Shown: piece by piece, positions 1,494 through 7,338 of the stretch
How the letters are laid out: every line of letters begins with the position of its first letter
How positions within the stretch are numbered: the stretch's first letter is position 1
NCBI GenBank assembly: GCA_023515725.1
Contig: JALDTO010000154.1
Span: 380,447 to 391,482 of the forward strand
From: Amoeboaphelidium protococcarum X5
Lineage: Eukaryota > Fungi > Aphelidiomycota
Direction of reading: 5' to 3'
Length of the DNA: 11,036 bases
Notes under the pieces: model-generated
What the model was told of the DNA's origin: nothing
What the model saw: the letters and a program-made list of their open reading frames with translations, nothing else
Databases searched by the model: none
Program-made: the position numbers and the translations under genes

Positions 1494-1498
1494 AAAAA
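1494..1498 (-). terminator. RNA polymerase III terminator (TTTTT)
   Basis: T5 run immediately 3' of the tRNA discriminator base on the minus strand. Confidence 0.85.
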
Positions 1499-1570
1499 GG
1501 GGACCTGCCGGAATCGAACCGACGACCTCTCCGACCCAAACGGAGAATTATACCCCTAAACCAAGGTCCC
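1499..1570 (-). tRNA. tRNA-Pro (anticodon TGG), 72 nt, intronless
   Basis: Reverse complement GGGACCTTGGTTTAGGGGTATAATTCTCCGTTTGGGTCGGAGAGGTCGTCGGTTCGATTCCGGCAGGTCCCC. Acceptor stem GGGACCT/AGGTCCC, anticodon loop TTTGGGT (TGG at 1538-1536), B box GGTTCGATTCC, no encoded CCA. Confidence 0.96.
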
Positions 1571-1579
1571 ATATTTGGA

Positions 1580-1583
1580 TGAA
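1580..1583 (+). repeat. target-site duplication TGAA (left copy; right copy 7099-7102)
   Basis: TGAA directly precedes the TG start of the 5' LTR and directly follows the CA end of the 3' LTR. Confidence 0.9.
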
Positions 1584-1881
1584 TGTTAGCACACGCGTCG
1601 ATCAAGTATCAACAACTAACTCTGTGGGGCTTAGTTGATCAACATTGTTTCAAGTGCGCGCCTCTCTCATCATTGACGTCTCGAATAGGCAAGTATCTGC
1701 AGTATATTTGCGCGCCACTTATGAACATTGATTTCTTCCACTTAACGTGTTAATAGAGTATTTATCTTATTAACATATTTTATCTTCCTGTACTTCTGTT
1801 GGTGTCTCTGTTTGACTCTTAATCTTTGTATATAGCTTCCCGTTTGTCCCTATTGTGTTTATAGTCTGTCCAAGAGTATCA
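1584..1881 (+). repeat. 5' LTR (298 bp)
   Basis: TGTTAGCACACG...AAGAGTATCA; no differences from 6801-7098 found on manual comparison. Confidence 0.97.
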
Positions 1882-1882
1882 C

Positions 1883-1892
1883 TTAACACGTT
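1883..1892 (+). promoter_or_regulatory. self-priming primer-binding site (Tf1-type)
   Basis: TTAACACGTT, 1 nt after the 5' LTR, is the exact reverse complement of AACGTGTTAA at 1744-1753 inside the LTR. No TGG-initiated tRNA PBS is present. Confidence 0.8.
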
Positions 1893-1905
1893 CTCTGTAA
1901 TAGTA

Positions 1906-2856
1906 ATGTCTGGCACTAACACTCCTCCCGTTGATATCAATTAACTGATGGCCATTAATCAGCAGCTCTAGAATTAAATATAATTCCTCTCTGACTAAAT
2001 GACTTTATTACAACATCACGCTGCGCACTCAACTTCATCAGCGCCGCCTCCGCCATCTGCATTATAGAAGCGTTAAATTGTCTATCCTGAGAAATTCGAT
2101 GGTAATGTAACTGAGTTCCGCTCATTCGTCAATTAATGCTAATTGATGTTTGACTTACATCCTGAAGCGTTTGCATCTGATGACATCAAAATCAAGACTG
2201 TTGGCTCTTTGCTCTGCAAGAAGGCAAGCAAGTACTATGATCCGATTATCGAATAGCCGGACCAGTACAAGGATGAGCTGAAATCTTATGATTCATTCAT
2301 TTAGTGCCTTAAGGATTGGTTATGCCCCGCTAGCTAGCGTGATAATGATGAGAAAGCACTACGTAAGCTGAAACAAGGCACTTCCTCTGTCTCCGCCTAT
2401 GCGGCTGAATTTAGATATCTCTCTTCTGGAATTGGTTGGAATGATACTTCCTTAAAGTCTGAATTTAGAGAAGGATTGAACAATGATGTCAGACTGCTTA
2501 TGTTATCTACGGATGAGCCGGAGTCTTTGTCTGAGTTGGTAAAATTAGCCATCCGTTGTGGTGAACGCGTTGCTGATATGAAGACCTTAGGTGGTGGTTA
2601 TCGTCACTTCAGAAAGTAGCATTCATCCAGTGGATCTTCTACTGCTTCTGCTTATTCTAACTCTTCTACTTCTGCTTCTCATTCTTCTTCTGGCCCTTCT
2701 CATCCAGACAATATGGAAATTGATCAAGTAAAGCGTGGTCCTCTGTCTGCAGAAGAACGCCAGCGTAGACTGACTGAGAGATTATGTTTATACTGCGGTG
2801 GTGCTGGACATATTAAATCTGACTGCTCTGTGTTGAAGAATCGTACTCAAGGGTGA
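1906..2856 (+). CDS. gag: Gag (capsid plus CCHC zinc knuckle), 316 aa with TAR=Gln
   Basis: ATG at 1906, MSGTNTPPVDINQLMAINQQLQNQIQ...; motifs PEKFDG, LRKLKQGTSSVSAYAAEF, FREGLN, MEID, CLYCGGAGHIKSDC; ends at TGA 2854-2856. Confidence 0.95.
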
Positions 2857-5800
2857 CTCTCGAATGAATATATTTTTAGTCTAACTTCAGCTACTTCATC
2901 AAAGATGATTCTTCCTACTTTATTAAAGTATGGCCCGCAGAATATCCACCTTCCTTTCCTCTTAGATTCTGGTGCTGACAGCTGCTTCCTTAATGAAAGT
3001 GTCGTTTCTTAATTTAATATTCCCGTCGTCAGATGTAAGAGTAAAGTCCGAGTATCTTTCGCTGATGGAGACAGGCAGAATAACGTGTACATAACGCATC
3101 AAACTGTACCCTTGTAAATGCATATTGGTACTCATATTGAAACCATTACGTTCTATGTGATTAAACTTGCTCATAGTGGAATTATTGGGTACTCATGGTT
3201 GAAACTGCATAATCCAGAGATTGATTGGTCTGCTGAAACTATTAAATTTGCATCGCCGCATTGTTTGACTAGTTGCGTTAACTCTCCGGAAACGATTTCA
3301 ACTTCCGTGGCCTCAGAAACCGCTTGTTCAGTAGTATCTTCCGAAAGTTAGCCTGTATACGTGTCTCTCCCAGATTCTCGCAATTCTCTTAGTCCTGAGT
3401 CAGTCCCTGCTGCAATGTCTGCATTCCATTCCGTCCCTTAACTTCCCTCTGCTGAGAATAATCCAGTTTTTGAATCCTTTGCTGTTGCTGTGCCTTAACC
3501 TGTCGGTGAGGATGCCATTATTGATGTTGTCTCTGATATTAATTAGTTTGACTCTTGTGTCTCTGTTTCCGTTTCTGATTCTTCGTCTATGTCCACTCCA
3601 TTAAATGTTAGGAGTGATTCTACTTCTGTCACTGCTTCTGTCTCTAGTCTCGATTCTGCTTCTGTCGCTACTTCCGTCTCTTGTCTCGATTCTGCGTCTG
3701 TCATTACTTCTGTCTCTAGTCTAGATTCAACTTCTGTCTCTGGTCCCTCTTGTCTCAGCATTAATGCAGCAATTCTTGGTATGTATGAGAAGGATTCTGA
3801 TAACACTATTATTCCTGGTTTCATTTATGAGGCTGAAGATGGTTCAATTAATTATCGATGCTTATCTGATGTTATCCAAGAGTAAGTTTGTTTAATGAAA
3901 GAGGATGCCGATGCATCTAATTCAACTCTCCCTAATTAGATTAAGGATTTTGGTGATGTATTCATGAAGTAGCAGTTAAATGAGCTTCCACCTCATCGTG
4001 AACAAGACTGCACTATTGACTTGGAGCCTGGTAGCAAGCCTCCTGTTGGTAAAATGTATAAATTGACTTAGGAAGAAGATTCTGTCATGCGTGAATGGTT
4101 ATCAAAGAATCTGGATCGTGGCTTCATACGCAAGAGCTAGTCACCTTATGGTGCTCCCTGTTTCTTTGTTCGCAAGGCTGACTGGACTAATGATTCTAAG
4201 TTACGACTCTGCATGGATTACCGTGGATTGAACAAGATTACCATTAAGAATCGGAATCCTCTGCCAAACATATCTGACATTTTCCGCTCTCTTTAGAAAG
4301 GAAAGTTGTTTACTGCATTGGATTTAGATGGTGCATTTGAGCTTCTGCGTGTCAAAGCTGGCCATGAAGCTAAAACCGCTTTTCTCACTAAATATGGTCA
4401 ATACGAATTTCTGGTGATGCCTTTTGGTTTGGCAAACGCTCCCGCTTAATTTCAAACATTCATGAATGATCTATTTAAGAACTAGATTGGCAAATTTGTT
4501 GTGGTTTATCTGGATGATATTGTTGTATATACTGATGGTGATGAAAAGGAACATTGGTAACATGTACGCGAAGTTTTGTAGATTCTCCGTTTTAATAAGC
4601 TTTACTGTAAACTGTCAAAGTGCAAGTTCGCTTAATCTTCTACGTCTTTCCTCGGCTATATTTTGTCCAAAGATGGTATTCTCATGGATCCTAGAAAAGT
4701 CGAAGCTGTTACTCAATGGCCAACGCCAAAGAATGTAAAGGATGTGATGATGTTCCACGGCTTTGTGAATTTCTACCGTAAATTCATTCCGCACTTTGCA
4801 GATCTGACGCGTCCTCTGACTTAACTACTCAAAAAGGATGTTGTTTTTACTTGGGATGCCGAGAGGTAGCACGCATTTGACTCGCTGAAGAAGATGTTTA
4901 ATAGTAATATTGTACTAAGTCATCCTGATGAAGAGAAACCTTTCGTGGTTGAAGCAGATGCGTCTGACTATGGCATTGCCGGTGTATTGTCTTAGTAGTC
5001 TGACTCTGGAGAATTTAAACCTGTCGCTTTCTATTCAAGATAACTCAATCCTGCTGAGCGTAATTATGAGATCTATGATAAGGAATTACTGGCAATTCAT
5101 CAATGCTTCAAAGAATGGCGCCACTTTCTGCAAGGTGGTAAGCATCAAGTTACAGTCTTGACTGATCATAAGAGTTTGCAATATTTCACGACCACAAAGC
5201 AATTGACAAGGAGATAGGCTAGATGGTCTCTATTCTTCTCTGAGTTTGATTTTGTCTTGACACATCGTCCTGGTGCCAGAAATGGTAAGGCTGATCTGCT
5301 CTCTAGACGCTCAGATTATGCGGTTGACGAAGAGAAATACAATTTTAGATGTTTGTTAGATCCTTCGAAGTTTGTGACTCCGTAAGAGTTGGATCTGTTT
5401 TCCATGTCCGTTGGTCAAGAGCTGTAGTGTTAGATGATCAGAAGTGATGTACTCAATAAGGAATTTGATGAAGAGCGTGACTGGCCTATGGTAATTGCGC
5501 ATTTCCTGTTGACGGACGAATGGTTGGATGTATCTAGTGACATATTGGATAAATGTAAGCAAGAGTGTCAACATTTCATCATGGTGCATGGAAAGTTACA
5601 CAGAATCCTGGCTGATAATCGATCGAAGAGACCTTACTTGCTAAAGTCTGATAGAGATGCTCATATAGCTCGATTCCATGATGGACTTGGTCATTTTAAG
5701 TATCATTCCATAGTTGACCTCATTGAACGCCGTTTCTGGTGGCCTGATATGCATGCCGACATTAAGTAGTATATTAAAGAGTGTGCGCAATGCTAACTTG

Positions 5801-6855
5801 ATGCTTCTAAGAATTAGTTCACGCAAAAGACTCTTCTGCGTCCTATTCCTCCCGTTGCTCTCCCATTCGAGAGATGGGGTATCGACTTTGTGCAGGATCT
5901 GTAAACGACTAAATCTGGTAATAATCACATCATTACCGCTATTGATTACGCTACTCGTTGGGTGGTTGCTAAAGCTGTGAAGTTTAGAGATTCTGATACT
6001 GTTGCAGATTTCCTCTACAATGATATCTTTATGAATTACGGTGCACCTTATGAGATTTTGTCTGATAGAGCAAAGTCATTCTTAGCTGATGGTATAGCGA
6101 AATATGAAAGAATGCAAGGTGTTAGACCAATTGCTACTGCACCTTATCACCCTCAAACTAATGGTATGGTAGAGAGAATGCATTCTATGCTCAATCACGC
6201 GATAACTACTTTAACTAATGGGCGTCCGGAAAGATGGGACGAGTATCTGAAGTAAGCTTTGTTTGGTATACGCTGCCGAACTCATGCAGTGACCAAGAAG
6301 TCACCATTCTACATGCTTTATGGTGTGGAGCCTCGTTTACTAGGTGATTCGCGTCCTCCTGAGTGCACTTTGCAGCCGTTGGATGAGATTGAGTAGCTTG
6401 AGGAGAAAGGAGAAATTATGGCAAGAACCTTTGAAGCTATGGGAGATTCCAGAGCTGCTGCGTATGAGAGATCTAAGACTTAGGCTGAAAGTATGAGAAG
6501 ACGTCACAATCTTGATCCGAATGCTCCAGAATATTACTTCAAGATTGGTGATTGGGTCAAGTTAAAGCATCACAGCATGAATAAGTTTGAATTCGATTGG
6601 AAGGGACCATATCATGTTGTCGACGTTGGATTCCCCGGTACCTACTGGTTGATGTCACCTGATGGAATACGATTTGATGCTACAGTTAATGAAAGAGATC
6701 TTGCTCCTTTTTTGGCAGCTACTGAGAAGAATAAAGACTATTTCTATGATGGATCTTCAAGGAGTTCTGTGGATTAGCTGCCGTTTAGAGAGGGGGCTAG
6801 TGTTAGCACACGCGTCGATCAAGTATCAACAACTAACTCTGTGGGGCTTAGTTGA
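2857..6855 (+). CDS. pol: Pol polyprotein (protease-RT-RNase H-integrase), 1332 codons, same frame as gag
   Basis: No TGA from 2857 to 6852. Protease LLDSGA (D 2965); [26 protein letters not shown] (4507-4518); RNase H EADASD, DKELLAI, TDHKSL, ADLLSR; integrase HHCC (H5677, H5692, CAQC), D5884/D6064/E6172 (D,D35E), GPY motif ~6604; stop TGA 6853-6855. Confidence 0.96.
3616..3756 (+). repeat. 36-bp coding tandem repeat (~4 degenerate copies) in the PR-RT spacer
   Basis: Encodes [12 protein letters not shown] / [12 protein letters not shown] / [12 protein letters not shown] / [11 protein letters not shown]; units start at 3616, 3652, 3688, 3724. Confidence 0.9.
6787..6796 (+). promoter_or_regulatory. 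polypurine tract
   Basis: AGAGAGGGGG, followed by CTAG and then the 3' LTR start at 6801. Confidence 0.85.
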
Positions 6856-7098
6856 TCAACATTGTTTCAAGTGCGCGCCTCTCTCATCATTGACGTCTCG
6901 AATAGGCAAGTATCTGCAGTATATTTGCGCGCCACTTATGAACATTGATTTCTTCCACTTAACGTGTTAATAGAGTATTTATCTTATTAACATATTTTAT
7001 CTTCCTGTACTTCTGTTGGTGTCTCTGTTTGACTCTTAATCTTTGTATATAGCTTCCCGTTTGTCCCTATTGTGTTTATAGTCTGTCCAAGAGTATCA
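6801..7098 (+). repeat. 3' LTR (298 bp)
   Basis: Direct repeat of 1584-1881, TG...CA. Confidence 0.97.
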
Positions 7099-7338
7099 TG
7101 AAATCGAAGGCACGCATACAGTATATACCACATTTGCATTTTTACAATCTGTTACAATCTTTATGCCAAAGTTTCGCCATTGAAAGCTTTGCCAGCAAGT
7201 AACGTTAAGAAATTTACCTTAATCAACTCAAAGTACGATCAACGCAATCCGGACTTATCGTTTCACTTTCTAATTGTTTCGAGATTTGAGGAATATTGCA
7301 AACTTTATAGTCAAATTTGCATTAATCATAGTTCATCA

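What the first reader, a model, noticed from the sequence alone, without database searches (positions are those of the whole stretch)
1499..1600. Gypsy element inserted 13 bp upstream of a tRNA gene: likely Pol III-targeted integration
Seen: 13 nt (1571-1583) separate the tRNA-Pro 5' end from the LTR, in divergent orientation, with a 4-bp TSD. Rebuilding the empty site puts TATATA (7122-7127) at -33 to -38 of the tRNA. Established: yeast Ty3 (via TFIIIB) and Dictyostelium DGLT-A insert just upstream of tRNA genes as a safe haven in compact genomes. Inference: a further, possibly independent, origin of tRNA-gene targeting in this lineage.
Basis: partly seen in the sequence, partly recalled or inferred. 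Interest (0 to 1): 0.8.

Follow-up and report, generated by a model that had tools for sequence, protein, structure and literature searches.

The report
Retrotransposon aimed at Pol III start sites
A young, intact gypsy-type jumping gene of the alga parasite Amoeboaphelidium protococcarum sits 13 bases upstream of a proline tRNA gene because its family inserts, almost to the nucleotide, at the start sites of tRNA and 5S rRNA genes, as yeast Ty3 and Tj1 do; close relatives in a chytrid fungus also sit at tRNA genes.

Summary
tRNA-Pro(UGG) lies at 1499-1570(-). A 13-nt spacer follows, then a 5,515-bp Ty3/gypsy element (1584-7098) with identical 298-bp LTRs, pointing away from the tRNA. The 4-bp duplication is TGAA. 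A paralogous empty site in the same genome carries a single copy of it and shows the TATATA at -33 to -38.

It is not chance. Of 35 assessable LTR sites genome-wide, 27 lie 2-36 bp upstream of tRNA (24) or 5S (3) genes, in both orientations (P below 1e-56). Six more abut an unannotated Pol III-like gene or a stacked LTR at a tRNA gene. At 5S genes, and at tRNA genes carrying the shared TTCATC motif, the junction is 2-5 nt before the inferred Pol III start.

The element also self-primes (inferred) and has one conserved in-frame TGA between gag and pol. These three traits match fission-yeast Tj1.

The "independent origin" idea is not supported as a trait private to this lineage. The closest named relatives, in the chytrid Batrachochytrium salamandrivorans, have the same design, and two of six examined sit 6-8 nt upstream of tRNA genes. 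The relation to Ty3/Tj1 is unresolved.

This scan had already reached the same reading on sister copies elsewhere in this genome. Verdict: a new member of a known kind.

The parts
1494..1498 (-). T5 run directly after the tRNA 3' end: Pol III terminator
   Evidence: read directly
1499..1570 (-). tRNA-Pro(UGG) gene, identical to three other copies in the genome
1571..1583 (-). 13-nt spacer, TTCATCCAAATAT on the tRNA strand: inferred pre-tRNA leader. The inferred Pol III +1 is the A opposite window position 1580
   Evidence: the +1 is inferred from 5S genes
1580..1583 (.). left copy of the 4-bp target-site duplication (TGAA; TTCA on the tRNA strand)
   Evidence: a single copy in the empty paralogous site L098
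1584..1881 (+). 5' LTR, 298 bp, TG...CA. TATA-like box at 1702-1709. Inferred R start near 1744
1744..1753 (+). LTR-internal AACGTGTTAA, a 10/10 complement of the PBS: inferred 5' end of the transcript used for self-priming
1883..1892 (+). primer-binding site TTAACACGTT (self-priming type, no tRNA complementarity needed)
   Evidence: the same layout is in the chytrid relative
1906..2856 (+). gag (Retrotrans_gag; CCHC knuckle at 2785-2826), ending at the only in-frame TGA (2854-2856). TAA/TAG are read as Gln
2857..6855 (+). pol in the same frame as gag (readthrough inferred). PR DSG 2962-2979; RT YLDD 4507-4518; RNase H 4870-5214; IN HHCC 5677-5793; IN core 5875-6252; SH3-like CTD from 6547; conserved FYDG tail 6742-6756. 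The stop is TGA 6853, inside the 3' LTR
3350..3885 (+). Ser/Thr/Val-rich linker with 36-nt tandem repeats between PR and RT; its length varies between copies
6787..6796 (+). polypurine tract AGAGAGGGGG just before the 3' LTR
6801..7098 (+). 3' LTR, identical to the 5' LTR
7099..7102 (.). right copy of the TSD (TGAA)
7122..7127 (-). TATATA, the tRNA gene's original upstream TATA-like box (-33..-38 from the mature end, about -23..-28 from the inferred start), now moved 5.5 kb away
   Evidence: similar boxes 26-29 nt before the start motif at unoccupied tRNA genes

Best explanation
The window holds a recently inserted, apparently intact Ty3/gypsy LTR retrotransposon of Amoeboaphelidium protococcarum. 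Its integrase complex is directed to the transcription start sites of RNA polymerase III genes. Integration makes a 4-bp staggered cut that spans or lies just upstream of the Pol III +1 (here TTC|A, 10 nt before the mature tRNA-Pro), in either orientation, between the upstream TATA-like box and the start site. Shown here: the anatomy, the real empty site, the genome-wide association with tRNA, 5S and one further Pol III-like gene, the nucleotide-level position, and the same behaviour in chytrid relatives. Inferred: the tether is a protein of the Pol III pre-initiation complex. TFIIIB (TBP/Brf1) bound at the TATA box is the most likely candidate, as for Ty3 (about 50%), with TFIIIC or Pol III itself as alternatives. 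The contact surface must differ from Ty3's, because the integrase ends 25-45 residues after its SH3-like domain and has no room for a Ty3-type chromodomain. A conserved C-terminal N-x-x-F-F-Y-D-G motif is a candidate tether. Also inferred: reverse transcription is self-primed (Tf1/Tj1 style), and pol is made by readthrough of the single gag-terminal TGA.
For: Anatomy. Empty paralogous site with one TTCA. Genome-wide: 47 LTR matches reduce to 36 sites. tRNA genes with the 5' end facing the LTR lie at 8-36 nt, and 5S genes at 2, 3 and about 4-12 nt. Five further sites abut a 285-nt gene that starts T(T/C)CATCC and ends in a T-run; all 6 copies of that gene are occupied. Statistics: P 5e-57 or lower; orientation 12:15. 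Start-site inference: 5S +1 is the A of TTC|ATCGACG. The same TTCATC motif sits at unoccupied tRNA genes (13 of 43 against 5.9 expected), with a TATA-like box 26-29 nt upstream in 10 of 13. Where the motif is present, LTR junctions lie 2-5 nt before that A. Activity: all five full-length copies keep one open frame with 47-52 TAR codons and exactly one TGA at the same gag/pol position; four have identical LTR pairs. Relatives: Bsal elements lie 8 nt (divergent, TSD TGTT) and 6 nt (tandem) from tRNA genes and share the PBS/LTR/PPT design; chance about 1e-6 to 1e-7. A related element in another assembly has its 3' LTR region followed by TTCATCC and tRNA-Gln. Precedent: Tj1 and Ty3 (PMC4600332, PMC5911963).
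Against: No transcription start site was measured; the +1 rests on 5S genes and a shared motif that only about a third of unoccupied tRNA genes carry in strict form. No de novo integration was observed, so selection after integration cannot be excluded formally. Three sites (L025 at a contig end, L036, L037) have no Pol III gene nearby. Some paralogous sites may be duplications of one insertion, not independent events (for example L023/L035 and L024/L031). No protein contact is shown; the one complex prediction gave no verdict. In B. salamandrivorans four of six elements examined lie in TE nests without a detectable tRNA gene next to them.
Confidence: 0.88

Rival explanations
1. Same targeted integration, but the tether is TFIIIC (as for Dictyostelium DGLT-A, whose RNase H binds Tfc4) or a Pol III subunit (as for Ty1), not TFIIIB.
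For: The raw distance to mature tRNAs (8-36 nt, either orientation) also fits the DGLT-A range of 13-33 nt (PMC5911963; PMC6101501). The integrase lacks the C-terminal chromodomain that Ty3 uses to hold Brf1. The N- and C-terminal integrase pieces have no sequence match to Ty3.
Against: The position is fixed relative to the start site and TATA box, not to the internal A/B boxes. It is the same at 5S genes, which have a different internal promoter. Leader length varies while the junction stays at the start motif.
Confidence: 0.3
2. Integration is guided by DNA sequence: the integrase recognises the TTCA/TTCATC motif itself.
For: TSDs are often TTCA, TCAT, TCCA or TTCC, and the motif abuts many junctions.
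Against: About 15,000 TTCATC sites are expected in the genome, yet copies are found almost only at those in front of Pol III genes. Several targets lack the motif (L003 TSD AAAC, L008 AAAT, L013 AATT; Bsal TGTT).
Confidence: 0.05
3. Integration is random, and only copies in the harmless space in front of tRNA genes survive selection in a compact genome.
For: The genome is small (23.6 Mb), so selection against genic insertions should be strong.
Against: Selection would leave copies spread over all intergenic DNA, not within a 2-5 nt window at Pol III starts. Even copies with identical LTRs (window, L043, L044, L045) are at such sites.
Confidence: 0.03
4. Chance neighbourhood of one element and one tRNA gene.
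For: None beyond the single case.
Against: 27 of 35 assessable sites, P below 1e-56.
Confidence: 0.001

Closest known systems
Tj1 of Schizosaccharomyces japonicus (Ty3/gypsy; Guo, Singh and Levin 2015, PMC4600332)
   Same: Integration a few bp upstream of Pol III start sites, at tRNA and 5S genes. Self-primed reverse transcription. A TGA stop at the end of gag with pol downstream.
   Different: In the S. pombe assay, all 16 Tj1 insertions at Pol III genes had one orientation; here both occur (12:15). S. japonicus tRNA genes lack upstream TATA boxes, whereas here the element lands between a TATA-like box and the start. Host is an aphelid with TAA/TAG = Gln. Sequence relationship not tested.
Ty3 of Saccharomyces cerevisiae
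   Same: Ty3/gypsy order. Integration within a few nt of the Pol III start, at tRNA, 5S and other Pol III genes, in both orientations. Best solved-structure match over RT-RNase H (7q5b/4ol8, E 4e-102 and 2e-79).
   Different: Ty3 uses a tRNA primer and a +1 frameshift (own knowledge). Its integrase holds TFIIIB through the CTD plus a vestigial chromodomain of about 66 residues. Here pol ends 25-45 residues after the SH3-like CTD with no such domain. TSD is 4 bp here, not 5. The IN core scores closer to PFV integrase than to Ty3.
DGLT-A of Dictyostelium discoideum
   Same: A gypsy element 13-33 bp upstream of mature tRNA coding sequences, in either orientation.
   Different: DGLT-A contacts TFIIIC subunit Tfc4 through its RNase H. 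No full-length DGLT-A copies survive, whereas five intact copies exist here. 5S targeting and start-site precision are shown here.
Unnamed gypsy elements of Batrachochytrium salamandrivorans / B. dendrobatidis (annotated only as hypothetical proteins)
   Same: Closest named relatives: 71-72% identity in the IN core and 53% over 973 residues of pol. LTR starts TGTTA(T/G)CACAC. The PBS begins CTTAACACG and complements an LTR-internal 10-mer. Similar PPT; 4-bp TSD; two copies 6-8 nt upstream of tRNA genes.
   Different: Standard genetic code. LTR bodies are not alignable. Most copies seen are degenerate and nested. No paper describing their tRNA association was found.

Membership tests
Ty3/gypsy (Metaviridae) LTR retrotransposon | Two LTRs (TG...CA) flanked by a short target-site duplication | tested here: met
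   298-bp identical LTRs and TSD TGAA. The empty paralogous site has one copy of the TSD.
Ty3/gypsy (Metaviridae) LTR retrotransposon | Domain order gag - PR - RT - RNase H - IN (integrase after RT) | tested here: met
   Pfam hits in that order on the stop-free pieces and on the annotated family protein P0201. The best PDB match is the Ty3 polyprotein.
Ty3/gypsy (Metaviridae) LTR retrotransposon | PBS next to the 5' LTR and PPT next to the 3' LTR | tested here: met
   PPT at 6787-6796. The PBS at 1883-1892 is of the self-priming kind.
Pol III start-site targeting elements (Ty3, Tj1, Tyl3/Ylt1/Tyl6 type) | Copies lie within a few bp upstream of tRNA gene transcription starts | tested here: met
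   24 tRNA-adjacent sites. Where the start motif is present, the junction is 2-5 nt before the inferred +1. The start is inferred, not measured.
Pol III start-site targeting elements (Ty3, Tj1, Tyl3/Ylt1/Tyl6 type) | Other Pol III genes (5S rRNA) are also targets | tested here: met
   Three 5S genes with an LTR 2, 3 and about 4-12 nt upstream, plus a 285-nt Pol III-like gene occupied in all 6 copies.
Pol III start-site targeting elements (Ty3, Tj1, Tyl3/Ylt1/Tyl6 type) | Integrase binds TFIIIB (shown for Ty3 only) | not testable with these tools
   One complex prediction (IN C-terminal piece with the aphelid TBP core) gave no verdict.
Ty3 proper | C-terminal vestigial chromodomain after the SH3-like CTD, which contacts Brf1 | tested here: not met
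   No chromodomain hit by Pfam. Across 20 clade members pol ends 25-45 mostly variable residues after the CTD. No fold test was done.
Tf1/Tj1 self-priming group | The PBS is complementary to the 5' end of the element's own transcript | tested here: inconclusive
   A 10/10 complement between 1883-1892 and 1744-1753, which lies 35-40 nt after a TATA-like box. Chance is about 0.004. The transcript 5' end is not mapped.
Tf1/Tj1 self-priming group | Tj1: an in-frame stop codon ends gag and is needed for activity | tested here: met
   A single TGA at the same place in five copies of two subfamilies whose gag is only 71% identical; context TGA-CTC or TGA-CTA. Need for activity not testable.
Tf1/Tj1 self-priming group | Tj1: one fixed orientation relative to the Pol III gene | tested here: not met
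   12 divergent against 15 tandem.
Chromoviruses | Chromodomain at the integrase C-terminus | tested here: not met
   No PF00385 hit in the window pieces, P0201, P0202, Bsal P0214 or P0011.
DGLT-A | [quoted passage not shown] | tested here: met
   8-36 nt in both orientations. The variation is explained by leader length.
DGLT-A | RNase H domain binds TFIIIC subunit Tfc4 | not testable with these tools

The most novel reading that the evidence does not exclude
Pol III start-site targeting is an old, shared trait of a chromodomain-less, self-priming gypsy clade that spans aphelids and chytrids, including the amphibian pathogens Batrachochytrium. It would be tethered by a short conserved integrase C-terminal motif (N-x-x-F-F-Y-D-G), not by a Ty3-type chromodomain. 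That would make it either the ancestral state from which the ascomycete Tj1/Ty3-type targeting descends, or a third independent solution.
Probability: 0.3. Interest if true: 0.7.

Novelty: new member of a known kind. Interest (0 to 1): 0.55.

Why it matters
Targeting of Pol III genes is the textbook safe-haven strategy of retrotransposons in compact genomes. According to the 2018 review read here (PMC5911963), it is known for LTR elements only in ascomycete yeasts and dictyostelid amoebae. This family extends it to aphelids, the sister group of fungi, and by its relatives to chytrids, with several intact and probably active copies. That makes the old question of single or repeated origin testable by phylogeny and by binding assays. 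Two points differ from the models. The element lands between a TATA-like box and the start site, so it should disturb the tRNA promoter, which the Tj1 authors argued Tj1 avoids in its own host. And its integrase lacks the domain that Ty3 uses to hold TFIIIB.

Tried and rejected
- Complex prediction of the integrase C-terminal piece with the aphelid TBP core gave 'no answer'. It is not evidence either way.
- The PDB sequence search with the integrase N-terminal piece found nothing. The C-terminal piece found only a weak MLV integrase CTD match and no Ty3 match.
- A tree placing the element relative to Ty3, Tj1, Tf1 and DGLT-A was not built.
- Most metagenomic relatives sit on contigs of about 5 kb that hold the element only, so they say nothing about targets.
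- Rfam at a relaxed threshold did not name the 285-nt Pol III-like gene, and its fold is no more stable than shuffles (z 0.37).
- Chance, selection-only and pure DNA-motif explanations were considered and rejected (see rivals).
- The idea that the tRNA is part of the element was rejected, because the neighbours are many different tRNAs and 5S genes and an empty site exists.

Full report
**What is at the site.** ARAGORN and Rfam call one tRNA gene in the window, tRNA-Pro(UGG), at 1499-1570 on the minus strand. A T5 terminator follows directly at 1494-1498. Thirteen bases beyond its 5' end (1571-1583) a 298-bp LTR begins (1584-1881). An identical copy lies at 6801-7098 (298/298, TG...CA). TGAA flanks both ends (1580-1583 and 7099-7102). 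A polypurine tract (6787-6796) precedes the 3' LTR.

**Genetic code and coding capacity.** Under the bacterial table the 4.9-kb interior has no long ORF. One frame, however, reads as a continuous gag-pol with 47 in-frame TAA/TAG codons and only one TGA. The in-frame TAA/TAG sit where relatives have Gln, for example NAPA-Q-FQ and CxxC-Q-L. The genome carries tRNA genes with UUA and CUA anticodons. Annotated proteins of Amoeboaphelidium protococcarum match this family at 98% (P0201). The host is therefore this aphelid, which reads TAA/TAG as Gln; that this code is published for the species is my own recollection. Pfam gives Retrotrans_gag, zf-CCHC, aspartic protease, RVT_1, RT_RNaseH, Integrase_H2C2, rve and an SH3-like integrase CTD, in gypsy order, with no chromodomain. 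The best solved-structure match is Ty3.

**A real empty site.** The genome has four identical tRNA-Pro(UGG) genes. The upstream region of the one at G000:C264:2480541 (L098) is the paralogue of the window's two flanks joined together. It contains a single TTCA and the TATA-like box at the same distance. This proves a 4-bp duplication and a clean insertion. It also confirms that TATATA (7122-7127) stood at -33 to -38 of the tRNA.

The LTR finds 47 matches in the 23.6-Mb genome, which reduce to 36 sites: five full-length elements and about 30 solo or partial LTRs.
- At 24 sites a tRNA gene lies 8-36 nt away with its 5' end facing the LTR. One of these is an intron-bearing tRNA-Ile and one a tRNA(UUA).
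- At three sites a 5S rRNA gene lies 2, 3 and about 4-12 nt away.
- Five sites abut a 285-nt repeated gene that starts T(T/C)CATCC and ends in a T-run. All six genomic copies of that gene carry an LTR end at the same place, one of them from another LTR family.
- One site (L005) is separated from its tRNA-Glu by a solo LTR of that other family, a stacked insertion.
- Of the remaining three sites, L025 ends at a contig edge and cannot be assessed, while L036 and L037 have no Pol III gene nearby.

With a generous upper bound of 1,300 Pol III genes, 27 of 35 assessable sites has P about 5e-57. Orientation is unbiased at 12 divergent to 15 tandem.

**Where exactly it inserts.** 5S rRNA is not trimmed at its 5' end (established knowledge), so its first base marks the Pol III start. 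That base is the A of TTC|ATCGACG, and LTRs end 2-3 nt before it. The same TTCATC motif stands in front of many tRNA genes, including unoccupied ones. There it occurs in 13 of 43 genes against 5.9 expected, and a TATA-like box starts 26-29 nt upstream of it in 10 of those 13. Where the motif is present at an occupied site, the LTR junction lies 2-5 nt before its A, and the duplication is typically TTCA, TCAT, TCCA or TTCC. The distance to the mature tRNA varies from 8 to 36 nt only because leaders differ in length. All tRNA-Lys(CUU) copies, for example, have a conserved leader and insertions at 28-30 nt in both orientations. In the window the duplicated TTCA is -13 to -10 of tRNA-Pro, so the inferred +1 is the last duplicated base. 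The start site is inferred, not measured.

**Other traits of the element.**
- Ten bases just after the 5' LTR (1883-1892) are a perfect complement of 1744-1753 inside the LTR, which lies 35-40 nt after a TATA-like box. This is the Tf1/Tj1 self-priming layout.
- The only in-frame TGA ends gag, and pol follows in the same frame. The TGA is kept at the same place in all five full-length copies, including a subfamily whose gag is only 71% identical. Its context is TGA-CTC or TGA-CTA. In a genome where TGA is the only stop codon, this implies programmed readthrough.
- Four of the five full-length copies have identical LTR pairs, and all keep the frame open, so the family is very probably active.

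**Comparison with the known.** The review table of Pol III-targeting LTR elements lists only ascomycete elements (Ty3, Ty3p, Tj1, Tca8, Tyl3, Ylt1, Tyl6) and dictyostelid ones (DGLT-A, Skipper-2). Tj1 combines the same three traits: self-priming, a required gag stop codon, and integration 1-10 bp before Pol III starts including 5S genes. In the S. pombe assay, however, its insertions at Pol III genes all had one orientation, and its own host's tRNA genes lack TATA boxes. Ty3 holds TFIIIB through its CTD and a vestigial chromodomain of about 66 residues. In this clade pol ends 25-45 residues after the CTD. Those residues are variable except for a conserved N-x-x-F-F-Y-D-G motif. No paper linking aphelids or Batrachochytrium to tRNA-targeted elements was found.

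**Is it a private invention of this lineage?** A full-library search with the integrase core found 42 representatives below 1e-30. Most are 5-kb lake-metagenome contigs holding only the element.
- The closest named relatives are in Batrachochytrium salamandrivorans: 71-72% identity in the IN core and 53% over 973 residues of pol.
- Of six B. salamandrivorans elements examined, L108 has identical LTRs and a tRNA-Gly 8 nt from its 5' LTR (divergent, TSD TGTT). L109 has a tRNA-Gln 6 nt after its 3' LTR. Chance is about 1e-6 or less.
- The other four lie in TE nests, one of them with LTRs stacked 4 nt apart.
- The chytrid element shares the LTR start, a PBS beginning CTTAACACG that complements an LTR-internal 10-mer, the PPT and the 4-bp TSD.
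- A third relative, in an unidentified assembly, shows its 3' LTR region followed by TTCATCC and a tRNA-Gln.

The trait therefore belongs to a clade shared by aphelids and chytrids. Its relation to Tj1/Ty3 remains open.

**Earlier work of this scan.** Sister copies in this genome were already read as Ty3/Tj1-like start-site targeting with self-priming. I re-derived those claims independently from the window. I add the empty site, the sixth Pol III-like target family, the chytrid relatives and the missing chromodomain.

**Verdict.** Pol III targeting is strongly supported. An independent origin is not supported as a lineage-private trait. This is a new member of a known kind, of moderate interest.

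Noticed in passing
L091:1501-1790 (G000:C249:552058-552343) and five other copies (L092-L096): An unannotated gene family of about 285 nt with six copies at 93-100% identity. It starts T(T/C)CATCC, has a B-box-like GGTTCGAGAC and ends GCTTTT. Every copy has an LTR end abutting its start. Rfam does not name it, and its fold is no more stable than shuffles.
   Followed up: partly
L108:4593-11063 and L109:562-7100 (B. salamandrivorans GCA_021556675.1): Full-length gypsy relatives with identical LTRs lie 8 nt and 6 nt upstream of tRNA-Gly and tRNA-Gln. They have the same self-priming PBS design as the aphelid element. No published description was found.
   Followed up: partly
L102:4726-5097 (NCBI GCA_013565735.1, organism not identified): A related element that uses the standard code. 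Its 3' LTR region is followed by TTCATCC and a tRNA-Gln(UUG), the same start motif as in the aphelid.
   Followed up: partly
window 7075-7081 (and the same bases of the 5' LTR, 1858-1864): The LTR carries TTTATAG 18-24 nt from its 3' end. In tandem insertions this falls 27 to 21 nt before the target's start, where the displaced native TATA-like box used to be. It might restore the tRNA promoter. It is absent from the chytrid LTR.
   Followed up: no
window 6742-6756; alignment A2: The motif N-x-x-F-F-Y-D-G near the very C-terminus of pol is conserved in 20 clade members (F and G invariant), while the tail around it varies. It is a candidate short tethering motif.
   Followed up: no
window 3350-3885; L044, L045: A Ser/Thr/Val-rich linker with tandem repeats lies between PR and RT. 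Interior lengths differ among full-length copies (for example 4,752 against 4,803 nt in the two copies of one subfamily), probably through repeat number in this linker.
   Followed up: partly
L044 (G000:C249:262250-267589), L045 (G000:C158:363613-369003): A mosaic subfamily whose pol 3' half is 96% identical to the window copy, while gag is only 71% identical and the LTR 91%. This suggests recombination between families.
   Followed up: partly
L094:1330-1500, L005, L036: A second LTR family with its own CGTGTTAA motif occupies the same kind of site, sometimes stacked with the first family at one tRNA gene.
   Followed up: partly
L046-L089 (44 tRNA loci): Many tRNA loci come in pairs with upstream flanks about 85-95% alike, as in a duplicated or hybrid genome. 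This is how the window's empty site could be found.
   Followed up: no
L010:1811-1885, L089, L021:843-916, L082: tRNA genes with anticodons UUA and CUA, the decoders expected for TAA/TAG = Gln. One tRNA(UUA) gene has a solo LTR about 12 nt upstream.
   Followed up: partly
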